The notes: generated by a model not told the origin, from the letters alone. DNA of 64,000 bases from Mizuhopecten yessoensis (GCF_002113885.1 NW_018480074.1:186001-250000), one strand, 5' to 3'; positions 121-64,000 are shown, numbered from the stretch's first letter. Translations and numbers: made by a program.

Positions 121-3100
121 CTGTAGCTGGAGTCCGGTCCAGCAATGTGGCAAATAGAAACACGTCACCTACGTCGCGTTCGACAAAGACATCTTGGACC
201 CGTATAGGCGAAACACTCATTTTCTCTGCCATGAGTAACCGTGTCTTCAGTTTAAATATATCGGCTGTATCCTGGTTATATAAAGCTGCAGAAAAGATAT
301 AAATGATCAATATTAAAAGTTAAAAAATAAAAGCAAAATTTTATAAATTAAAACTGATATCTTTACGCGGCCTGAACCAGTTACTGTGATGTGCTTACCG
401 TTTGTCTTTAATGGACTAGATAAGCCAGTATAACATTGAAATATAATCACGTTCGTCTAATCTACTGATCAATGCCCTTTTTATTTCAACATTTGACAAA
501 CACAGCAACTTTAACGTTGTTAAAAGTGCCCTAAACGATACCCTGTACCTCAAAATTACAAGTCTCTGCAATATGCAATCTCAAAGAAATGGTATATACA
601 TATTGTATTGTTAATAATAAATAAGTACACTGGTGGTATTGACCAATCAAACCGGTTCATCTTATTCATTGCATCCAAACTATCGCTCATTTTAATATGC
701 AATATCTACATGGAAACAGGTTTAAAAACTTTTCAATATTCAATAACTACATACTTTGGAAGTAATCTTTGTTAGAATTTAATATTCATATACATCCAAA
801 GGAATGGTAACTAATGTTGATTTTCTAACATATAACTTGATTTTAAGCATTGTATTTTAAATACGCACCTGGGAAGCGGATGTTGAATTGAAATTTAGAT
901 TCGGGTGGATAACAGGATGAGATTTGGTATGAGGAGAGGTCTGCATGTTGATTGTCAAAGTCTATAATGTTGTAAACTCGGTAGAAATCAGCCTGTAAGG
1001 ATAAAATGAGTTCTGTTATTGCAATCAGTTATACCAATATATTTACAGTTGCTCAATTGCAATGCATTGAGAAGGCAAATGTTGACAACATTTGCTATTG
1101 TTACGTCATCAATCTCTTGTGACGTCATCAATTTCGTTGATGTCAACACTTAACTTCCTGTTCAAATAACGGTTCGAAATAACTAAATCAAGCGTAACTA
1201 CTCTATCAAAATGTAAATGTATATAATGAATATCTTAGCAAATGTTATTATAGCCCTATAACACACATTTATATTGCTGACAAACTCACATAAAGCCCTG
1301 TCGTGCTTTCTTAAGTTTTTCATGAATATCTAAGTGTGTTATAGGACCATAACAACATTTGCTAAAACATCCATTGCTTAAGTGTGTGTATAATGCTTCT
1401 ACATATTTTCAAATGTGTTTTGACCGCAAAGTCTTTCAAATGATCAGAAACGTTATTGGTAATTTGACATGTAGTATTAAAAAGAAATAACAAATACATA
1501 ATTGCATAATTTAATCAAAATTAGTAGCTAGTGTATTGTCATGCGATTTTAAATAATCTTTTAGTCTTGTGACCCTAAACATAAATGCATGTTCCAGTAC
1601 ATTGACACCTAGATGTTATGGCAAAGAGCATTTGACGTTACATCTATTAATAATAGTACTATAAATATTTCAATATTCATTAGTAATGATCTTAACAAGC
1701 ACGTCCATACCTGACTGTCATCACTGATATGACACACTCATTAAAAAATATATACACCTATCATACATAGGTTAATTATTATGAGTCATGTTAAGCATAT
1801 AAAATATATAATAAAAATTACAAACCGTGCGATGCTTAAGATACATTCAAATCATTGGCACGTCAGAAAGGCGAGGATTTATTACGCTTGCACAGACGGA
1901 AAGTAAACAAGAGTACCGCGAGCTGGAACAATACACGCCCGTCGAATGCCATATAGTGTTATACACTTTCTTACATTGAAATAAGATCTGCATCATGTAA
2001 ATGTAGAAGAAAATATCCGGACAAAAAATCAAATACTGAAATGAACAAAGGGCAATAACTTTTGCAAAAATCGTCGAATCAAAGTTCTTTTAAGGGAGAC
2101 ACAACTTCATTTCATGATTATTTAGCCTACTATGTTTCAAAGAAATCTGTCAAAAAATGTAGGAGAAGATCTCCGGACAAAAAAATCAAGTACTGAAATG
2201 AACAATGGGCGATAACTTTTGGAAAAATCGTCAAATCAAAATTCTTTTAGGGGAGACACAACTTCATATCATGATCATAATGTATACCTAGTTTCAAAGA
2301 GATCAGTCGAAAAATGTAGGAGAAGATTGCCGGACAAACAAAAGTTTACGCCGGACGGACGGACAACCCCATACCATAATACTTCCGTCAAATTTTACGG
2401 GCGTATACAAATGTAAAGCATCGCAAGATAACTATGCCTGATACACATATACTAATAACTTGGAGGTGATCAAGTATACCAAGGTTCAATGCGGCAAACC
2501 GAGAATCAATGTAGTACAAACACACAAGGCACGCAGTTCTTTACCCAACGCTGACACGTTAGGAAATATGAGGAACCTCGAAGACACCAATTAGTATCAA
2601 ATTAGAGCAATAATCTGTATCGTTAACCTTTAGATTCCATTAATAACTCCCGTCTTTCAGAGGTATAGCGTATAGTATTTTTTATATTAATTTTTACTAC
2701 AGTGTGACAATAAATGTACATGTGAATGAGGTAACCTACCCATGGAGTATCGCTGGCAACTGTCAGTCTGATGGGAACAAATTCGTCAGTATTTGTCCCA
2801 TGATTGGGCACATCATACATGCTCCTCTGCCAAAAAAATTGTTTGTGTTATATTGCTAAATATTGTAATTGCTCCCATTAAATGTACAACACATTTGCAG
2901 TTTTTGATGATAAAATTCCATTAACAAACAAACATTCTTGCCTATACAAAACACCTTATTGAAACTTGGAGGTCGTTTTGACGCAAAGTGTTTCCCTTTT
3001 CTTTGAAGATTACTAGTTCAACCACCGAATCATATTTGGTCAAAATTGAACTGGAAAAGACAAGGTAGTTACAAACAGCAAGAAAGTGTATATGGTTGTT

Positions 3101-54820: not shown

Positions 54821-57000
54821 CATGTATTTACATTCCAAATTTTATAGTTTATTTTGAGCTATCTATAGGTATTCCCTTTCATTTTCAATATTAAGTGTCT
54901 GTCGTCAGTGCAAACAAGATTCCTGGAAAAGCCTAACGTCTTATGCTTGCTTCTAACGGTTGCCTCATGTTATTCGAGGCAGTGGAAGTTGCTTCGAAAT
55001 GACGCTGATCTTGTTGCGTCCATTGCCCTTTGAACGCAATTTCTTCTGGTAATGCTCATCGTAGAGGAACCTGCGGTGAAAATGTTAATGAATAACACAT
55101 CCTGCACACAGTCACGTCTCTTTGATACACTTCATAATACACGTCAAAACTTAACATCACACCCTGGACACGACCTTGTACGACAAACTAATAACATTAT
55201 GATAAGCACTGAACAGACCCACTATGTCACAGCACACCCTGGATACACTAAATCTTTGCAACACACCTAGGACACGACCATTTGATACAAAGCAGCACAA
55301 CCAATTGTCCATCACCTTTTTAAACTTTAATATATGTTTACTTGTATTAAAGTAATTTCATAGTTGTTTTTGTTGGATTGTGCGTTTTATCAAAATAAAT
55401 ATTTTTAGGTAAGAAAATTGACTAGATCAGAGGGATTGATCATTGAAAAAATTAACTGTCCTACAGATAAAAAAAAACACTGGCCAGGCCCATAGTGCAA
55501 GCGGCTGAATCAACACTTTCCTTGATACAATACACTTATATTACACATCCCAGACAACCCATATCAAAACGATTTATCAATATAATCTCTCAACCTGCAC
55601 ATATGTCATAGACACTTCCAAATCTTCGCGATGCCTTCCGGAAAGTCAATACCATTATAACTCGACCTAGACATACATCCACGTATATTTTGTCCCCACA
55701 TCCTGAACACAGTGCCATATCGCATACCATGTACACACCAATATGCTTTTGTTTGTGTAAATAACAGTTGTCCTTTTATCATATGGAATTATTATTCTAA
55801 ACAGTTCGAGGGCAATTTTTTTCCATTAAGATATGTATTTATTCATTTGATAAGCCATTTAAAAATAGTGTAATTCATCCCAGGAAATACCAAATTAACC
55901 TCAAAATTAAGAAAACCAGAAATAGAACACTAGTAAATTAAATAAGATGCCAAATATCAGATGTGAGCTTTTCTTTTCAATAAACCCGATATCTTCTATA
56001 AAAATATATAACAGATTGATGAGAGAAATATTGACTTGTTGGAGCAGTATGTTTAACCATTGTCATACGTAAAAAATATATTTTATATCAACAAATGTAA
56101 TACCTTCTTATTTCACACAGGCATAGTTGGAAGCTTACATTCATTTGTAATTATGATACATAATCTTAAAATTTCCAAAAAAACTGAAACATTAATATTA
56201 AAAACATATTTGTCTATTCTTAATCGAATGTTTGTATTTGAACCATATTTGACACTCAGAACTGTTATCCCTTTTTTTAATAGCGGAAGAATTACAAGTA
56301 CCATTTTATGATGCCATATTGCTATGCCAAGTCAGTGGACTAATTCCATCTCTTTTTAAACCAATTCTTTCTTTCTTACACTGAAAATGCACATGCGAGA
56401 TTGAATATGTCAAATTCTTATTAAAATATTGTGATTTTGAGTGAGATCGGTACCAAAATAGGATTCTATTCTATTATTAAATTTCTATACTTATTTTAAT
56501 CGATGCGAAAAAAAATCTGTTATCTGTTATATTGGTAAAAAACGAAGTTTTAATGTGATACTTATATGATTTGCCACACTGTAAGCAGGGATCAAAAACT
56601 GAATGATACAAGCTATACATAACGTTATCAACATTTTGTTTAATTTTGGCTAAAATACTCGCTAAGTTATTATTAGAGGAAACTGAAAAGATGTTAAGAA
56701 AGTAAAAACACTCAAAGTTGATGTGACGCAATACAATTCACTACCGCCCTCCATGTTGTTAAAATTTCTAGAAGGGTTATTGAAAGATTCTTAATAACAT
56801 TCCTTTAAGGACAACATACAAAACCGGAAATATACGACAGTCAGAACAAGTGTACCAAATATTATAATTATTGCGAAAGAACTTTTTTTTTTAAATATAA
56901 ACGTTACCTATTTTTGAATTCTTGGATCAATACACTATAAATATTTCAAAAAATACTTTGCTCTTGTTTTGCAACTATAGAAATGATTAGTTAATATTCC

Positions 57001-57102
57001 ATTGTATAATGTTAAATTGTATAATGATATATTGTATAATGTTATATTGTATAATGTTATATTGTATAATGTTAAATTGTATAATGATATATTGTATAAT
57101 AT
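57001..57102. repeat. 15-bp tandem repeat
   Basis: attgtataatg(t/a)ta(a/t), about 7 copies. Confidence 0.9.
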
Positions 57103-57408
57103 TATATTCCTATCAAAAGTTGTCTATATCTATTATTTACTTTTTCTTTTTTTCCCAAACAATGCATATTATCAATATCAACAATTTTACCAGATGCTAA
57201 AAATATAGACGGGAAAAAACTGATTATTGTCACGAATTGCAAGAACAACAAAAATGTTCTCCTCATGAAAATTGCAAATGTCAGAATGACATTCCATACC
57301 GATATTAACATTTGATTTTGTGCGAGATCAATTTAAAAGATTCCTATTCAAAATTACATCGGAAAATTGTATACTGTTGATGTTTGATGTTTTCAATGCA
57401 TTACATTT

Positions 57409-60400
57409 CTATTTTCCGAAACAACAGAAGAATCTGCTCTTCATCCCCTTTTTCTTTTGCTTCTTGGTTCTTGCATATTGGTCATCAGGCGTGACACTTT
57501 TTACCTCTCCAGATCCAGAACACTGTGGGACTAGGACTTCCTTGACTTCAGTAGGAAAATTTGGCAAGATGTCCTGCATATCAACTTTGATGTTGTCGTA
57601 CGATCTCGCTGGTTTTGGTGATCTTGCATTCCTCATCTGTAATTATAATTGTACTAAATTAAACAAATAATAATTGAATGATTTTAAAAACAAAACTAGA
57701 AAACGTCTGTAAGACATGAATGCCCCCGTCAACATGTAAAATTAGCTTCAGTGTTTGATGTTTCACGGGACGGGACGGATATGGGCAGATTGAGATATAA
57801 AATAAATTGTAAATGCCGACTTACTTGGTTAATCACATCCAGAGTTGATTTGGAAGGTTTGTATCTGAATGCATTGCAGTTCTCTGGAAGATAATGAAGG
57901 GAACATGAGTTAATGCAACAGAATACGTATGTGAATCACGTAGAGACAGGTGATTGTATTCTAATCATTGGGTTTCAGTTTTATAAATCATCATGCATAA
58001 TTATATGAATCCTGGAACGCATTCCTTCTAATATATAAATAAAGTTAATACTTAATTTTTTTTCATGAAGTAAACTGGTGATTTCACATGGTTGATAATC
58101 GGAAATCACACAACGGAACAATTTGGCCTAGTGTAGCGTAATCCGAACTGGATCTTTTTCAGTTGAATTTCAAAATAAAGTAGCATCTAAAAATGAAGTA
58201 ATTAAACGTGAATGGTAACTTCTAAACAAGAAGCTTACGATCAATGTATCGTGTGAAGAAAAGTTCCCTAAACTTTTGAGCACGCTCTTCATTACGCAGA
58301 CGAAGTTCTTCATTCTCCTCTTGCGGTGCACATTTCAACCAGCTTTTGGTCAAGGATACGTCACGAACTGATGTACAATTTCGGGAAAAAACAGTCAATT
58401 CAATAGTTTACATAACATATATGATTAAACAAGAATTCCACGGAAGTGGATGCATCGGCTGCGCAGGAAGCTGGGAGATTATGAAGAAATAGATACACTT
58501 TTCATTTCAAGAAATGATGTTAAAAGAAAGCAATAATCATAGATTATGTTTTTGGATGGCATCTTTTTGTTATATAATCTGTTATTCTGAGAAGAATACT
58601 CTGAGTTTTAAAGAAACTGCTATGGATACTCATTGTCTCAATTCCAAGTTTAATTTGTATGATTTGTCGGATGGTTTCCCATAAATAAATGAATAAACTT
58701 GTGGCTTATGATGTTAAACAGCTAGTGTTGTCAATAACATTTGAAAATTCATGTATGCTTAGCACTGCATGAAGTTTGAGTTTGATCGGCCCAAGGAAAC
58801 CAAAGTTATCACACGAAAACAGATTTTCTATTTATAGTAACAGTGACCTTGACCTTTGGACCTGAAACGCAATCCCAAGCAAGCACTTTTGGTAAGAAAT
58901 TTGAGTTTGATCGGCACGAAAACCTCTGTGCGGACGACGCCGACGCCGACTAAGCAATACCTATGTGTCACCAACTTTTCGCAGCCGACACAAAAACTAA
59001 ACCTAAAGACAATTTTTTCCTTTTTAAAAGTGCACTGCATTTTATCTGGATATTTGTGGGGTTTTTTTATATTAAAACTGTATGTTTTCCTGTTCACCTA
59101 AAGTATAAAACCTCCCACTGAAAGTGGAAATATGTGTGATCTCAAAAGATGTTATTTTAATGTCCAACATTACTTTCTGACTTTTAAAATTAATGCTTTT
59201 GTAGTATACATAAGATTTTTGTTTTTTTGATGAACAACGGTTTAACAATTAATTAATCCTTTAAAGATGTCTTTTATTCTAAAATTAAGTTTAAAAATGA
59301 TTGGTATGAAACAAGGTTTACAGAACACGCTACATCCTCATTTTTCTACCAAATTCCATATTTCTCGTTAATAATCGAAAAGACGTCTAAATATTTGTTA
59401 ACATCAAATTCCTCGTACTAAAACTGTTTGTATGACATAGATATTATAATAAGAACACATTCCTGCACTTTAAATTGAATATGGTATGATAAATATTGCT
59501 TACGAATCTGCAGTAACTCATTTTATGGCAACAGTTTTGATTACTTTTATGACTTGTCATATATATATGCACTTATATGTAATAAACAGTGGGAAAAGAC
59601 TTCAAATTATAAATAAGTGTATAATAACTCAACAACAGAATCCACGAAAATATCTATATTTTTAGTGTAAGTTATAAACATTTTAAAACTGATTGCTATA
59701 AAACCTAGTTCCAGCAGACAGGTAATTCGAAATGCATTACGGAAAGGATTTGGACGGATGACTTTTATGGCCCACTTGTCGGCTAACAGTGCTGAACCTG
59801 GCCTTGAGCTTGCTTCTTCCCGTGGAACGACATCATCTTTAAATCACAAAATTGTCATAATTTATACAGAATTTATAAACAACATCATACTTTTCTTGTA
59901 ATGATACATTTTATAACTTCAAAGCCGGTTATTTCATTAAAGAATGTAAGTATGCGTTGGTCAACTGACTCTTTTGAGCATGCTTGCATGGAAGGGTTTG
60001 AACTAGGTATGCTTGGAAACAGAAAACTTCAAAAGAACAAATTCAAACATAAATGTGTACCTATGTCTGTTGTGACTTTTGTCCTCACTTCAACCCGTCC
60101 TGGTTGTTTCGTTGCAGCTTCGTTCTTTGATTTCTTTACTGCTGCATCTGTTGGAAATAAAAACGAAAAGTGCTGAACAGATCCAGGTATTTGAGTAAGC
60201 AGGTCACAACAATAAATACTTTTTAACTTCAAGGACGGTAATTCCATTGAAGTAAGTATACATTGATCAGCTAATTATTTTAAACGGGCTAAAGGTAATA
60301 AGATTTTAACGTTGTTTATTTGGAAACAACAACATTTTAAATTCAAACAAAAATTGTGTACCTATATTTATCTCACGACAGGTTTTTGCTTTTGGTTTCA

Positions 60401-62621
60401 CTCTTACTGTCCGTGATCGTTTAAATGCAGGTTCGTTCTTTGATTTCTTTGCTGCTTCATCTATTGAAAATATAAACGAAAAGTGCTGAACAGATACAAG
60501 TATTTGAGTAAGCAGTTCACAACAATAAATACGATTTGCTAACTCCATACAAGATGACCGGTTTATACATTGTACAGTGCTCGGTTGAAACATATTATAC
60601 GTTCTAACTTCAATAGACGACGGCTATTCCACTAGAGTAAGTATACATTAATCAGCTACTTCGTTTGAGCGGGCTTGTGTAGTAGGATTTGAACGTTGTA
60701 TATTTGGAAACAGCAGCACTCCAAATTAAAACATGAATATGTACCTATATCTGTCTGAAAGGTTTTGACTTTTGACTTCACATCAACTGGTCCTAATTGT
60801 TTCATTGCAGCTTCATTCATAGCTGCTTCATCTGTTAGAAATATAAACAAAAAGTGATGAACAGATACAAGCATTTGAGTAAGCAGTTCACAACAATAAA
60901 TACGATTTTTTAACTCCATACAAGTTGACCGGTTTATACATTGTACAGTTCTCGGTTGAAACATATTATACGTTCTAACTTCAAAAGACGGTTATTCCAT
61001 TAAAGCAAATAAACATTGATCAGCTAATGTTTTAGCGGGCTTGGGTAGGAGGGTTTGAACTTTGTATGTTTTGAAACAGCAACAACCCGAATTAAAACAT
61101 GAATATGTACCTTTATCCGTTTTGACTTTTGACTTCACATCAACTGGTCCCGATTGTTTCATTGCAGCTTCCTTCATAGCTGCTTCATCTGTTAGAAATA
61201 TAAACAAAAAGTGCTGAACAGTTACAAGCATTTGAGTAAGCAGTTCACAACAATAAATACGATTTGCTAACTCCATACAAGATGACCGGTTTATACATTG
61301 TACAGTGCTCGATTGAATCATATTATACTTTTTAACTTCAAAAAACGGTTATTCAATTAAAGCAAGTATACGTTAATTAACAGATTTTTTTAGCAGGCTT
61401 GGGTAAGAGGGTGTATATTTTGAAACAGCAACACCCCAAATTAAAACATGAATATGTACCTATATCTGCTTTGACGTTTGACTTCACATCAACTGGTACC
61501 GATTGTTTCATTGCAGCTTCCTTCATAGCTGCTTCATCTGTTAGAAATATAAACAAAAAGTGATGAACAGTTACAAGTATTTGAGTAAGCAGGCCATAAC
61601 AATAAATATGGTCTGCCGTAGACATAACATTTTTCTCTTCACGATAATACATTCAGTCTTTAAATTAAACCATCACTTTCTGTATTTATTCTCGAGAACA
61701 ATAATTCTCGTTTGTCCGAATTATTTGTTCGCGTGAAATTAATTTGATTACGCGATTGATATTTTACTCAAAAAATAACAAAATGAATAAATAATTTATT
61801 CCTCTTTTTGCATTATTTAGTTAACTGTTTTAAATGGCAAGTATAGGACATGTGAGTGTAAACTACCTTAAGGGGAAATGCAACCTGCAATCGCATTATA
61901 TATTTATTGTGGCAACTTGCTATCTTTATTACCAATGGCTGCCATCTGAAAGCAGCCCATTACTTAATTGTATCCACAGTTTGATTTAATAGAGTTTTAA
62001 AATAATAATATCGGGACAGCAGAATTCAATTTGATATTACATGTATATATAATCATATTAGGTCTATGTTTTTCCATGAAAATCACAAAAAAAACCACCA
62101 AGAGATGCATATGACTCAATAGTAAATTATCAATTGAAATTAAGTATAAAGCACAATTTTAATGCTTGAGAGAATATAATGCTGATGCAAAGTACAAATT
62201 CACAAAGTGAAAGCAAACCTCTCATCTTTTATATAGCATATACATGTTAAGCCTCGTTCATGTTCAGTAACGTTGTATCTTTTCTCGGCTTTGGACAAAT
62301 AATATCTTCGTCTCAACAGATTCCTTTTTGGTGAAAGTGAGATTTTTTGTCATTGTAACTTTATAAATGACAACGTATACACTTCCATAAAAATACATAC
62401 GAAAGCTCGCGAGCAAAGATCACGTGATCTCGAACGTTAGTCCGTGTCATAAAAACAAACTCTTTTAAATTCATTAATCAATTGTTAACGTCTCCTTGCG
62501 CCGCTTGAACAGTTTATATCTCCCATAACTACTTACTTGCATCGATAGCATCCAAAGCGGTCAGTGTGGCCTCTGAGTATATATCATGTACCAATGTCTG
62601 AAAGGCCTCTTCAGACATCAT
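57409..62621 (-). CDS. Uncharacterised ~341-aa protein with a tandem array of duplicated symmetric exons and a C-terminal polybasic-CC tail
   Basis: Exons 62537-62621 (acceptor boundary at 62648), 61460-61537, 61111-61188, 60745-60831, 60362-60460, 60061-60147, 59741-59836, 58239-58367, 57825-57883, 57409-57636. All are GT-AG-bounded and phase-compatible: 1026 nt with a single terminal stop. Starts MMSEEAFQTLVHDIYSEATL (frame is also open to the acceptor, so an upstream coding exon is possible) and ends KKQKKKGMKSRFFCCFGK. Confidence 0.75.
58427..58997 (+). mobile_element. HINE/pearl-like non-autonomous Helentron element in an intron
   Basis: Starts AAACAAGA; subterminal IR cggctgcg/cgcagccg; gtgaccttgaccttt motif; (GACGCC)n microsatellite; terminal tgtgtc..gacaca stem. 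Confidence 0.75.
59940..61610. repeat. Five tandem ~310-370-bp exon-plus-intron units
   Basis: Acceptor-to-acceptor spacings 349, 357, 371, 313 bp; intron parts conserved (tttgagtaagcag.tcacaacaataaatac; tttggaaacagcaaca..aaatt.aaaca..aat.tgtacct). Confidence 0.9.
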
Positions 62622-62865
62622 CTTGGTAATAGACTTCGGATAACGATTCTGCAATAAGTGTCAAGTTTATTGTTAGTGCTGGATACACTTAACATATTAC
62701 GACTGTTTATGGCTATGATAGTCCACAGGTCAGTGATGCTCGCCTGATGATACATCATAACTTGTTAAATAATTGCAAGAATACAATACATTGATGTCTA
62801 TAGTTAACATTTGACATCCGTTTCTTTATATTGGATATCACAAATGATTTCTAATGGGAAATTAC

Positions 62866-62884
62866 GATTGATTGGTTGATTGAC

Positions 62885-62920
<36 letters not shown>
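62866..62920. repeat. (GATT)n microsatellite
   Basis: About 12 gatt units with minor variants. Confidence 0.95.
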
Positions 62921-63056
62921 CGGTCAGGTGGGTAGTGGATAACACACCTGCCTTATACCAAAACGGCTAGGGTTTGATTTTTCAGGTAGAGTATAGTAGG
63001 TCACATGTCCATAGGTTTTATCCGGATACTCCGATTTCCTCCCGCATTTAGACACC
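62921..63056 (+). mobile_element. Decayed tRNA-derived V-SINE-like element
   Basis: ggtgggtagtggataacacacctgcc (A-box-like), gggtttgatttt (degenerate B box), ggttttatccggatactccgatttcctcccgca (V-domain-like core). Confidence 0.6.
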
Positions 63057-63329
63057 ATGTGTGTATGATGATTGTGTGCGCTGGTGTTTCGTAGTATGAT
63101 GGTGTGCGAGTGATCATTTGGAATGGTGTGAAGGATGATAGTGCGCTATCGGTATGGGTTGATATTTTTTTCGGTTATAGCATATCATTATGTAAATGGT
63201 GATATGATGAATATAGGTGTAAAGATTGTTGGTACATAATACAGCAAACGTGGTGATGATGTGTAGAATAAGTGTGTCTGCGGAGGGGTGCTAAAACAAA
63301 GGGTGATAGGTGTGGTACTATGGTGTGAA

Positions 63330-64000
63330 ATGTGATAACGTGTAGTGTGATGATGTAAAGTGTAATGATGTAAAGTGTAATGATGTAAAGTGTGATGATG
63401 TAAAGTGTGATGATGTAAAGTGTAATGATGTAAAGTTTGGTTTGTGAAGTGTGATGCTGTGTGGTGTGACGGTGTGTAATGTGGTGATGTGTAATGTGAT
63501 AATGCGTAATGTGAAGTAGTGTAGTGTAATGTTGTGTGGTGTGATAATGTGTAGTGTGATAATGTGTAGTGTGATAATGTGTAGTGTGATAATGCGTAGT
63601 GTGATGTTGTGTAGTGTAATGGTGTGTAGTGTAATAATGCGTAGTGTGATGTTGTGTAGTGTGATGATGTGTAGTGTGATGGTGTGTGGTGTGATAATGT
63701 GTAGTGTGATGTTGCGTAGTGTAAAGGTGTGTAGTGTAATGCTGTGTGGTGTGATGATGTATAGTGGGATGGTGTGAGTAGTGTGATGATGTGTAGTGTG
63801 GTGTTGTTAAGTGTGATGATGTGTAGTGTGGGGATGTGAAGTGTGATGATGTGTAGTGTAATGGTGTGTAGTGTGGTGATGTGTAGTGTGATGATGTGTA
63901 GTGTAATGGTGGGTAGTGTGATGATGTGTAGTGTGGTGATGTGGGTGGGGTGATGATGTGTAGTGTGGTGATGGGGATAGAGGGATGATGTGTAGTGTGG
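63330..64000. repeat. 15-bp GT-rich minisatellite running off the right edge
   Basis: Unit gtgtagtgtgatgat and variants. Confidence 0.95.

What the first reader, a model, noticed from the sequence alone, without database searches (positions are those of the whole stretch)
57409..62648. Hidden orphan gene built on a tandem array of interchangeable phase-1 cassette exons
Seen in the sequence: the ORF track shows only fragments, but splicing joins 10 exons into one open frame. Five consecutive exons (78, 78, 87, 99, 87 nt) are serial duplicates of an exon-plus-intron unit: EAAMKEAAMKQSVPVDVKSNVKADI; EAAMKEAAMKQSGPVDVKSKVKTDK; EAAMNEAAMKQLGPVDVKSKVKTFQTDI; EAAKKSKNEPAFKRSRTVRVKPKAKTCREINI; AAVKKSKNEAATKQPGRVEVRTKVTTDI. 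All are multiples of 3 and phase 1-1, all length differences are in frame, and all have non-consensus donors (G|GTACAT or G|GTACAC). The next two exons (96, 129 nt) are also symmetric. Inference: any subset of these seven exons can be skipped without frameshift, giving a combinatorial, length- and charge-tunable Lys-rich linker, and the array may still be expanding by unequal crossing-over. I recognise no known family.
Basis: partly seen in the sequence, partly recalled or inferred. Interest (0 to 1): 0.8.

Follow-up and report, generated by a model that had tools for sequence, protein, structure and literature searches.

The report
Scallop gene with five duplicated exons
This is a real, expressed but already catalogued Yesso-scallop gene of unknown function in which one short linker exon was copied into five tandem copies; the copies seen in RNA are joined one after another, and mix-and-match splicing is not shown.

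Summary
On the minus strand, ten GT-AG exons (62621..57409) join into an open 341-codon frame. Five of them (78, 78, 87, 99, 87 nt, all phase 1-1) lie in a tandem exon-plus-intron repeat of about 310-370 bp that occurs nowhere else in the 988-Mb genome. Contigs from two public runs contain every predicted junction, so the gene is transcribed and spliced as read.

It is neither hidden nor a strict orphan:
- It is Mizuhopecten yessoensis LOC110443621, with two public models: XP_021343630.1 (283 aa) and OWF34903.1 (315 aa, lacking exon 2).
- It is a divergent member of a small family found only in scallops, with at least three paralogues in this genome and homologues in Pecten, Argopecten and Ylistrum.
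- Those relatives have six exons. Their single 54-69-nt phase 1-1 exon 2 is the ancestor of the array.

Combinatorial splicing is arithmetically possible but unsupported. Only consecutive junctions appear, and repeat exons are not under-covered. A Dscam-like either/or scheme is excluded.

The family has no Pfam, PDB or confident fold match. The protein is mostly disordered, with an N-terminal amphipathic helix and a basic Cys-Cys tail.

The 75 intron bases before each repeat exon are better conserved than the exons, and this is unexplained.

Verdict: an ordinary tandem exon duplication in a lineage-restricted gene, of modest interest.

The parts
62537..62648 (-). First coding exon: acceptor at 62648, ATG at 62621, donor after 62537 (GTAAGT). 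It encodes the N-terminal amphipathic helix and ends in phase 1.
   Evidence: An X2 contig covers 62537-62648 and joins it on both sides. It is homologous to exon 1 of the paralogues.
61460..61537 (-). Repeat exon E2 (78 nt, phase 1-1, donor GTACAT). It is missing from both public protein models.
   Evidence: The E2 donor is joined to an E3-type start in contigs of X1 and X2 (the 'goes back 78' joint; E2 and E3 share their first 39 nt).
61111..61188 (-). Repeat exon E3 (78 nt, phase 1-1, donor GTACAT).
   Evidence: The E3->E4 junction is in X1 and X2. It is present in P0002 and P0009.
60745..60831 (-). Repeat exon E4 (87 nt, phase 1-1, donor GTACAT).
   Evidence: The E4->E5 junction is in X1.
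60362..60460 (-). Repeat exon E5 (99 nt, phase 1-1, donor GTACAC). It is the most basic copy, with net charge +8.
   Evidence: An X1 contig of 233 nt holds the E4 tail, all of E5 and all of E6.
60061..60147 (-). Repeat exon E6 (87 nt, phase 1-1, donor GTACAC). This is the copy that aligns with the linker (exon 2) of the paralogues.
   Evidence: The E6->E7 junction is in X1 and X2.
59741..59836 (-). Exon E7 (96 nt, phase 1-1), equivalent to exon 3 of the paralogues (conserved K-W).
   Evidence: The E7->E8 junction is in X1 and X2.
58239..58367 (-). Exon E8 (129 nt, phase 1-1), the most conserved family motif: RDVSLTKSW.KC.P.E...LR...ER...R.L.
57825..57883 (-). Exon E9 (59 nt), carrying the conserved F-R-Y-K-x-S/T-K-S-x-L-D motif.
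57409..57636 (-). Last coding exon E10 (75 codons plus TAG). It ends in a polybasic stretch followed by F-F-C-C-F-G-K. The 3'UTR continues to at least 57200.
   Evidence: An X1 contig covers 57200-57636. The tail is shared with the paralogues.
59837..61616 (-). Tandem array of five exon-plus-intron units (349, 357, 371, 313 and 311 nt), preceded by a partial unit at the 3' end of intron 1.
   Evidence: The unit occurs only at this locus in the genome.
60148..60222 (-). One of five copies of a 75-nt intron segment directly upstream of each repeat exon. The others are at 60461-60535, 60832-60906, 61189-61263 and 61538-61612. It is 85-97% identical among all units, more than the exons are.
58400..59000 (.). 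Interspersed repeat of about 600 bp inside intron 7. It is not part of the gene's coding function and accounts for most of the RNA reads laid here from X17 and X22.

Best explanation
The stretch is the coding part of Mizuhopecten yessoensis LOC110443621, a transcribed gene with ten coding exons plus one 5' non-coding exon outside the window. It is a divergent paralogue of a small family found only in scallops. The family's usual members have six exons and 204-222 residues. They consist of an N-terminal amphipathic helix, a short linker, a conserved core (the RDVSLTKxW..C.PE.ED..LR motif and the FRYKxSKSLLD motif) and a basic C-terminal tail ending in cysteines. In this copy the ancestral linker exon (exon 2, 54-69 nt, phase 1-1) was amplified with its intron into five tandem copies. 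Unequal crossing-over is the likely mechanism. There were at least two rounds: an old one giving E5, E6 and a proto-E2-4, and a recent one giving E2, E3 and E4. Symmetry of the exons was inherited from the ancestral exon, so every copy kept the frame. In the RNA seen here the copies are spliced in one after another. This gives a 341-residue basic protein (pI about 9.3) in which a 129-residue Lys-rich, partly helical and otherwise disordered spacer separates the N-terminal helix from the core. Shown: the gene model, transcription, junctions, homology and the origin of the array. Inferred: that the array mainly acts as a longer spacer, that the Cys-Cys tail is a lipid or membrane anchor, and that the helix is a protein-docking site.
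For: Open frame and splice sites. All nine coding junctions are in contigs of two runs from two studies, with GT..AG ends; low-depth unspliced pieces lie alongside, as expected of pre-mRNA. A 5' leader exon with a GTAAGT donor lies 5.7 kb upstream, and an in-frame stop precedes the ATG. Identity with XP_021343630.1 and OWF34903.1. Family: exon-8 paralogues in the same genome; exon 1, 9 and 10 homology; a profile search of 1.84 billion proteins gives only scallop proteins at E<1e-10; a word search finds Pecten maximus and two M. yessoensis members. The paralogues have six exons, with a phase 1-1 exon 2 of 54 and 69 nt. E6 aligns to that linker. The unit is unique to this locus. Unit identities: E2/E3/E4 92-94%, against 69-81% to E5 and E6. 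dN/dS between copies is 0.4-1.1, indicating weak constraint as in a spacer. AlphaFold: a confident N-terminal helix (pLDDT 74-89), moderate-confidence helices in the EAAMKEAAMK parts, and the remainder under 50. Repeat-exon contigs have depths of 28-55 against 16-17 for the flanking exons. Coverage therefore gives no sign of frequent skipping.
Against: The tissue of the expressing runs is unknown, and two deep RNA runs showed no reads on the exons. Expression is therefore restricted, and isoforms elsewhere are unseen. Short-read contigs break at the near-identical exons and drop rare variants, so they cannot exclude skipping. Six joints were not displayed. The public 315-aa model joins E1 directly to E3. 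Weak GTACAY donors and a conserved upstream intron element are features often found at regulated exons. No experiment or known domain supports the proposed roles of the helix and tail.
Confidence: 0.75

Rival explanations
1. One reading: the five (or seven) symmetric exons are cassette exons used in many combinations, giving a spacer that is tunable in length and charge, in the manner of the titin PEVK exons.
For: All of E2-E8 are phase 1-1, so any subset keeps the frame. The repeat exons share weak GTACAT or GTACAC donors, whereas the ancestral exon 2 of the paralogues has GTAAGT or GTAAGC. The 75 nt upstream of each repeat exon are conserved above the exon level. OWF34903.1 lacks E2. Net charge differs between copies, from 0 to +8.
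Against: Only consecutive junctions are listed, in two runs. Repeat exons are not under-covered relative to the constitutive exons. The E2-less model can be a collapse of E2 and E3, which share their first 39 nt. The E1 junction contig cannot distinguish E2 from E3. NCBI lists a single isoform.
Confidence: 0.2
2. A Dscam-like cluster of mutually exclusive exons. A docking site in intron 1 would pair with the conserved selector element before each repeat exon, so that one copy is chosen per mRNA.
For: A site in intron 1 (61901-61933) is complementary to the conserved element (33 nt at 73%; 21 nt at 76%).
Against: Repeat exons are spliced to each other in the RNA contigs (E2->E3, E3->E4, E4->E5, E5->E6). 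That is incompatible with mutual exclusion. The duplex energy is matched or beaten by 15 of 200 dinucleotide shuffles and by 9 of 60 natural 924-nt chunks of the window. RNAalifold finds no convincing structure.
Confidence: 0.02
3. A decaying or functionless duplicate: a transcribed, rapidly drifting paralogue whose repeat array is neutral junk that happens to keep the frame.
For: dN/dS between repeat copies is near neutral at 0.4-1.1. Identity to the paralogues is only 24-32%. No orthologue was found in other scallops. Expression was absent in two deep RNA runs.
Against: The 341-codon frame is intact across ten exons, and all length changes are in frame. All 27 invariant family positions are kept in this copy. 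It is spliced and expressed in runs of at least two studies.
Confidence: 0.08

Closest known systems
Tandem exon duplication as a general way genes grow (surveyed in animal genomes by Letunic, Copley and Bork, 2002; recalled from memory, not checked here)
   Same: Neighbouring exons of similar sequence and equal phase arose by duplication of an exon together with its intron, and the reading frame was kept.
   Different: Many described cases are pairs used in a mutually exclusive way. Here five copies are spliced in series, in a lineage-restricted gene of unknown function.
Titin PEVK exons (short, symmetric, Lys/Glu/Pro/Val-rich repeat exons that are differentially spliced to set spring length; from general knowledge)
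   Same: Short symmetric exons of about 26-33 codons encode a charged, largely disordered spacer, so skipping would change length without a frameshift.
   Different: There is no sequence relationship. There are five exons rather than more than a hundred. Differential inclusion is documented for titin but not shown here.
Dscam exon 6 docking-site/selector system
   Same: There is a tandem array of duplicated exons, each preceded by a conserved intron element, and a partly complementary site lies in the upstream intron.
   Different: The exons are joined to each other in mRNA, and the complementarity is at chance level. It does not work like Dscam.
Scallop family of uncharacterised proteins: LOC110445128 and LOC110461769 (M. 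yessoensis), LOC117325652 (Pecten maximus), LOC132552435 (Ylistrum balloti), XP_069127946.1 (Argopecten irradians)
   Same: They share the N-terminal helix exon (85 nt, ending in phase 1), a phase 1-1 linker exon, the core motifs and the basic cysteine tail. The exon-for-exon correspondence is E1=1, E2-E6=2, E7=3, E8=4, E9=5, E10=6.
   Different: They have one linker exon rather than five, and 204-222 aa against 341 aa. Identity is only 24-32%. This copy lacks about 10 residues at the start of the core exon.
AKAP14/AKAP28 (PF14469)
   Same: It is the nearest cluster by protein-language-model features for the paralogue P0011 (score 0.84, which the tool calls a lead only). Both are small, and both have an amphipathic helix with paired hydrophobic residues every four positions.
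   Different: There is no Pfam match. The genome's true PF14469 gene lies at another locus, C4782. It is not a member.

Membership tests
Tandem exon-duplication array | Adjacent exons are homologous to each other, together with their flanking intron | tested here: met
   Five units align over exon plus intron. The unit occurs only at this locus.
Tandem exon-duplication array | Copies have the same intron phase and lengths that are multiples of three | tested here: met
   Lengths are 78, 78, 87, 99 and 87 nt, all phase 1-1. The ancestral exon 2 of the paralogues is 54 or 69 nt and phase 1-1.
Cassette (skipped) exons, combinatorial use | Transcripts exist that join non-neighbouring exons | tested here: inconclusive
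   No skip junction is among the 15 listed joints, and 6 were not shown. The E1 junction cannot tell E2 from E3. Contigs drop rare variants. One public model lacks E2.
Mutually exclusive exon cluster (Dscam-like) | Only one exon of the cluster per mRNA | tested here: not met
   The junctions E2->E3, E3->E4, E4->E5 and E5->E6 are present in RNA contigs.
Mutually exclusive exon cluster (Dscam-like) | Docking-site/selector complementarity above chance | tested here: not met
   The mean best duplex is -35.6 kcal/mol against -32.4 +/- 2.2 for shuffles. 15 of 200 shuffles and 9 of 60 natural chunks reach it.
Orphan gene (no relatives) | No homologue in the same or other genomes | tested here: not met
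   There are paralogues on C1046, C5330 and C5293 and homologues in four scallop genera. Nothing was found outside scallops, so it is a taxonomically restricted family.
AKAP28/AKAP14 (PF14469) | Match to the AKAP28 domain profile | tested here: not met
   There is no hit at E<=1 for the family proteins or at E<=10 for the exons. A genome scan with PF14469 hits C4782, C5182 and C1420 but none of the family loci.
AKAP-type anchoring protein (functional class) | Amphipathic helix that binds the PKA regulatory-subunit dimer | not testable with these tools
   The helix has paired hydrophobic residues at a spacing of four and is modelled with pLDDT 74-89. Binding needs an overlay or pull-down assay.

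The most novel reading that the evidence does not exclude
The array could be a regulated, variable-length spacer. Weak GTACAY donors and the strongly conserved 75-nt element before each copy would let the cell choose how many Lys-rich modules separate a docking helix from a lipid-anchored core. That would be a small PEVK-like length and charge dial in a scallop-specific scaffold protein, still expanding by unequal crossing-over.
Probability: 0.15. Interest if true: 0.5.

Novelty: new member of a known kind. Interest (0 to 1): 0.3.

Why it matters
It is a clean and young example of how a gene lengthens. An ancestral symmetric exon can be identified in sister paralogues, and it was copied four times together with its intron, with old and recent copies side by side. 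It also corrects the public gene models: both omit exon 2 and one omits exon 1, and RNA contigs support both exons. It defines a scallop-restricted protein family that no paper in the searched library mentions. If the copies proved to be differentially spliced, the locus would be a simple system for studying how new cassette exons and their intronic control elements arise. As it stands, the biology is ordinary.

Tried and rejected
- **Pfam:** scans of the single exons and of the family proteins gave nothing significant. A GIT_SHD hit at E 0.014 on exon 1 is below the cut-off.
- **PDB:** a sequence profile search gave only noise at E 1.1.
- **AlphaFold2:** with the 6-sequence alignment, mean pLDDT was 48 and pTM 0.21. 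I ran no fold search, because a low-confidence model gives meaningless matches.
- **ESM Atlas:** the nearest neighbours were AKAP14 and SPATA19 clusters at 0.82-0.84, below the tool's 0.9 lead threshold. Structure hits had TM of 0.33 or less.
- **AKAP28 membership:** tested and rejected.
- **Docking/selector pairing:** at chance level.
- **Conserved intron structure:** weak, at -13 kcal/mol over 286 columns.
- **Conserved 75-nt element in the paralogues' intron 1:** only 40-51% identity, so it is not shared.
- **Rfam on 57000-64000:** no match.
- **Paper search for six gene and protein identifiers:** 0 papers.
- **Search for short transcript-derived protein fragments with other exon combinations (P0009:1-120):** nothing found.
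- **Repeat unit as a transposon or satellite:** rejected, because it is unique to this locus.
- **Origin of the distant hit P0008:** the look-up gave only a run accession, with no organism.
- **The joined 341-aa model:** it was assembled only inside scripts, for the frame check and composition. It was not sent to any search or fold tool. Searches used single exons by reference, and the database proteins P0002 and P0009.
Full report
**What is there**

The region is eukaryotic and the gene lies on the minus strand.

| Exon | Window position (minus strand) | Length (nt) |
|---|---|---|
| E1 | 62621-62537 | 85 (from the ATG) |
| E2 | 61537-61460 | 78 |
| E3 | 61188-61111 | 78 |
| E4 | 60831-60745 | 87 |
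| E5 | 60460-60362 | 99 |
| E6 | 60147-60061 | 87 |
| E7 | 59836-59741 | 96 |
| E8 | 58367-58239 | 129 |
| E9 | 57883-57825 | 59 |
| E10 | 57636-57409 | 228 (including TAG) |

- Every intron is GT..AG.
- The exons sum to 1026 nt and read as 341 codons plus a stop, with no internal stop.
- E2 to E8 all begin and end in phase 1.
- The repeat-exon donors are G|GTACAT three times and G|GTACAC twice.
- TRF reports a 357-bp period over 60451-61608.
- A MAFFT alignment shows five exon-plus-intron units of 311-371 nt.

**Is it a gene?**

Yes. One look-up of public runs found several small runs of the same organism that hold 13-28% of the sampled words of the 5.2-kb stretch. The exons make up about 20% of it, which fits mRNA. 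I laid contigs of two of these runs (X1 and X2, from different studies). They contain the following joints:

- 57636/57825, 57883/58239, 58367/59741, 59836/60061, 60147/60362, 60460/60745 and 60831/61111. All have CT..AC ends on the plus strand, which is GT..AG on the minus strand.
- A joint that 'goes back 78' from 61537 to 61460.
- A joint from 61188 to 62537.

E2 and E3 share their first 39 nt. The 'goes back' joint is therefore the E2 donor spliced to an E3-type start. The last joint is exon 1 spliced to E2 or E3, and which one cannot be told (25 nt on that side).

X2 lacks the full E5/E6 and E4/E5 joints, but a 15-nt loose end shows E6 joined to E5. Low-depth contigs (2.5-3.1) over introns, against 16-55 over the spliced pieces, look like pre-mRNA.

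No second copy of exon 8 at high identity exists in the genome. The joints therefore do not come from a processed retrocopy.

Two deep raw-read RNA runs (X17 and X22, 19-24% sampled) gave no reads on any exon, so expression is restricted to certain samples.

A loose end behind 62648 led to a further non-coding exon at G000:C76747:254367 onward, about 5.7 kb upstream and outside the window. It has a GTAAGT donor. In the spliced leader an in-frame TAA lies 17 codons before the ATG at 62621, with no in-frame ATG between them.

**Is it hidden, and is it an orphan?**

No Pfam family matches any exon. Exon 8, translated by reference, finds the following in the same 988-Mb genome:

| Contig | Identity to exon 8 | E-value |
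|---|---|---|
| C1046 | 50% | 2e-6 |
| C5330 | 46% | 8.3e-4 |
| C5293 | 45% | 0.0102 |

There is a weaker match on C5486. A tblastn of all exons against 20 kb around these loci shows that the paralogues also share three other parts:

- the exon-1 helix;
- the exon-9 motif (FRYKxTKSLLD);
- the C-terminal tail (…RRRRFLSCFGK).

I aligned exon 8 with three paralogue pieces (A1) and searched the profile against 1.84 billion representative proteins. Eight hits had E<1e-3, and four had E<1e-10. The look-up named them:

- uncharacterised proteins of Ylistrum balloti and Argopecten irradians;
- a Ylistrum model fused to a fucosyltransferase;
- P0002, which is XP_021343630.1, 'uncharacterized protein LOC110443621 [Mizuhopecten yessoensis]', 283 aa.

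Its cluster mate P0009 is OWF34903.1 (KP79_PYT08691, 315 aa). P0002 begins at an internal Met of E3 and runs through E10. P0009 is E1+E3…E10. So the gene is already in public annotation, but neither model contains E2.

A word-index search with the family alignment added Pecten maximus LOC117325652 and M. yessoensis LOC110445128 and LOC110461769. All relatives found are scallops, and nothing outside Pectinidae reached significance. A search with P0002 alone found only itself. No orthologue of this divergent copy is therefore annotated in other scallops. No paper in the library mentions any of six identifiers.

**Origin of the array**

Mapping P0011 and P0012 to their loci shows six exons.

- Their exon 1 is 85 nt and ends in phase 1, like E1.
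- Their exon 2 is 54 nt (C1046) or 69 nt (C5330), phase 1-1, with consensus donors GTAAGC and GTAAGT.
- In the six-protein alignment, the last repeat exon E6 aligns with that linker (…KQPGRVEVRTKV… against …AEPSPVQLFVSG…).
- E7, E8, E9 and E10 align with paralogue exons 3, 4, 5 and 6.

The array is thus a five-fold amplification of the ancestral exon 2 with its intron, and the symmetric phase was inherited. The unit occurs nowhere else in the genome, so it is not a mobile element.

Identity between units:

| Comparison | Identity |
|---|---|
| Exons E2/E3/E4 among themselves | 92-94% |
| Exons E2/E3/E4 against E5 and E6 | 69-81% |
| Exon E5 against E6 | 71% |

E5 and E6 share a 9-nt insertion (KSK) that E2-E4 lack. 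At least one old and one recent round of duplication follow from this. dN/dS between copies is 0.37-1.10, which indicates weak constraint on the peptide.

**Splicing**

But the evidence available shows serial inclusion.

- All neighbour-to-neighbour junctions are present.
- No skip junction is among the 15 joints listed. Six more were not displayed, and I had only one call.
- The contigs over repeat exons are deeper (28-55) than those over E1 or E8-E10 (16-17). This is the opposite of what frequently skipped exons would give. Contig depth is a poor measure, and shared words inflate it.
- The E2-less public model may reflect real skipping or a collapse of two near-identical exons.
- Strict mutual exclusion is excluded by the exon-to-exon junctions.

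An inverted-repeat scan turned up a site in intron 1 (61901-61933) complementary to a conserved element before each repeat exon. This is reminiscent of Dscam docking and selector sites. However, the mean best duplex energy (-35.6 kcal/mol) is reached by 15 of 200 dinucleotide shuffles of intron 1 and by 9 of 60 natural chunks of the window. I reject that idea.

**An unexplained feature**

The 75 nt of intron directly upstream of each repeat exon are 85-97% identical among all five units. That includes the old pairs, whose exons are only 69-81% identical and whose remaining intron is 66-84% identical.

- The element is not shared with the intron before exon 2 of the paralogues (40-51% identity).
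- It has no convincing consensus fold.
- Selection on a splicing element (branch site, pyrimidine tract, enhancer) or local gene conversion could both explain it.

Together with the weak GTACAY donors, which the paralogues' exon 2 does not have, this keeps regulated inclusion alive as a minority reading.

**The protein**

The full model has 341 residues, pI about 9.3 and 13% Lys. Net charge of the repeat modules is 0, +2, 0, +8 and +4.

AlphaFold2 with the six-sequence alignment, with P0009 as target, gave mean pLDDT 48:

- a confident N-terminal helix (residues 4-40, pLDDT 74-89);
- moderate helices in the EAAM(K/N)EAAMK parts of the recent repeats;
- a helix in the core exon (pLDDT 53-59);
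- the remainder under 50.

I ran no fold search on such a model. The PDB sequence search was blank.

The N-terminal helix shows paired hydrophobic residues every four positions throughout the family. The tail is polybasic and ends in Cys-Cys-Phe or similar. From general knowledge, these suggest a docking helix and an S-acylated membrane anchor.

The ESM Atlas feature search put AKAP14 clusters nearest to paralogue P0011, at 0.84. The tool says that score is reached by a third of shuffled proteins. The AKAP28 profile matches a different locus of this genome and none of the family loci. The family is therefore not AKAP28, and an anchoring-protein role is only a hypothesis.

**Verdict**

It is an annotated, uncharacterised scallop gene belonging to a scallop-restricted family. 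Its exon array is a standard tandem exon duplication, with a nicely identifiable ancestor exon. Combinatorial splicing is not supported by what could be seen, and it is not excluded either.

- The joined 341-aa model was built only inside scripts, to check the frame and composition. It was not sent to any search or fold tool. Searches used single exons by reference, and the database proteins P0002 and P0009.

Noticed in passing
window 60148-60222, 60461-60535, 60832-60906, 61189-61263, 61538-61612 (minus strand): The 75-nt intron segment before each repeat exon is 85-97% identical among all five units. That is better conserved than the exons (69-81% between old pairs). It is absent from the paralogues' equivalent intron. 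Splicing element or gene conversion: undecided.
   Followed up: partly
window 58400-59000 (intron 7): An interspersed repeat of about 600 bp with internal tandem sub-repeats. There are at least 861 first-look candidates genome-wide at 73-96% identity. It is heavily represented in the RNA runs X17 and X22, with many loose ends, meaning it is transcribed from other copies. It accounts for the long intron 7.
   Followed up: partly
L020:1501-1621 (G000:C76747:254367-254487, outside the window): The non-coding first exon of the gene, with a GTAAGT donor and a short upstream ORF (ATG…TAA, 8 codons). A perfect palindromic TGACGTCA (cAMP-response-element consensus) lies about 115 nt upstream of the donor, near the likely promoter.
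   Followed up: partly
G000:C1046, exon 2 donor of LOC110445128 (L016, about 2220-2290, minus strand): About 21 nt spanning the end of exon 2 and its donor (…ACAACTACTTGTTTTAGGTAA) is duplicated in tandem, giving a second GT 31 nt downstream. This is a small local duplication at the same exon that was amplified in the window's gene.
   Followed up: no
P0004 (Ylistrum balloti XP_060075577.1): This public model fuses the core and tail of a family member (residues 1-~110) to a complete fucosyltransferase (PF17039 plus PF00852). It is probably an annotation fusion of neighbouring genes.
   Followed up: no
window 57001-57108, 62866-62918 and 63320-63999: Simple repeats flank the gene. There is a 15-nt minisatellite (7 copies) just past the 3' end, a GATT microsatellite (13 copies), and a 15-nt minisatellite of 45 copies running to the window's end.
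   Followed up: no
G000:C5486:834680-834778 and a second copy about 5 kb away (L015:4057-4149): Two nearby ORF pieces carry a weaker version of the core motif (W.SCPPHEEDAELREK…W). A 65-aa Logan protein (P0008) resembles them. This may be a more distant branch of the family.
   Followed up: partly
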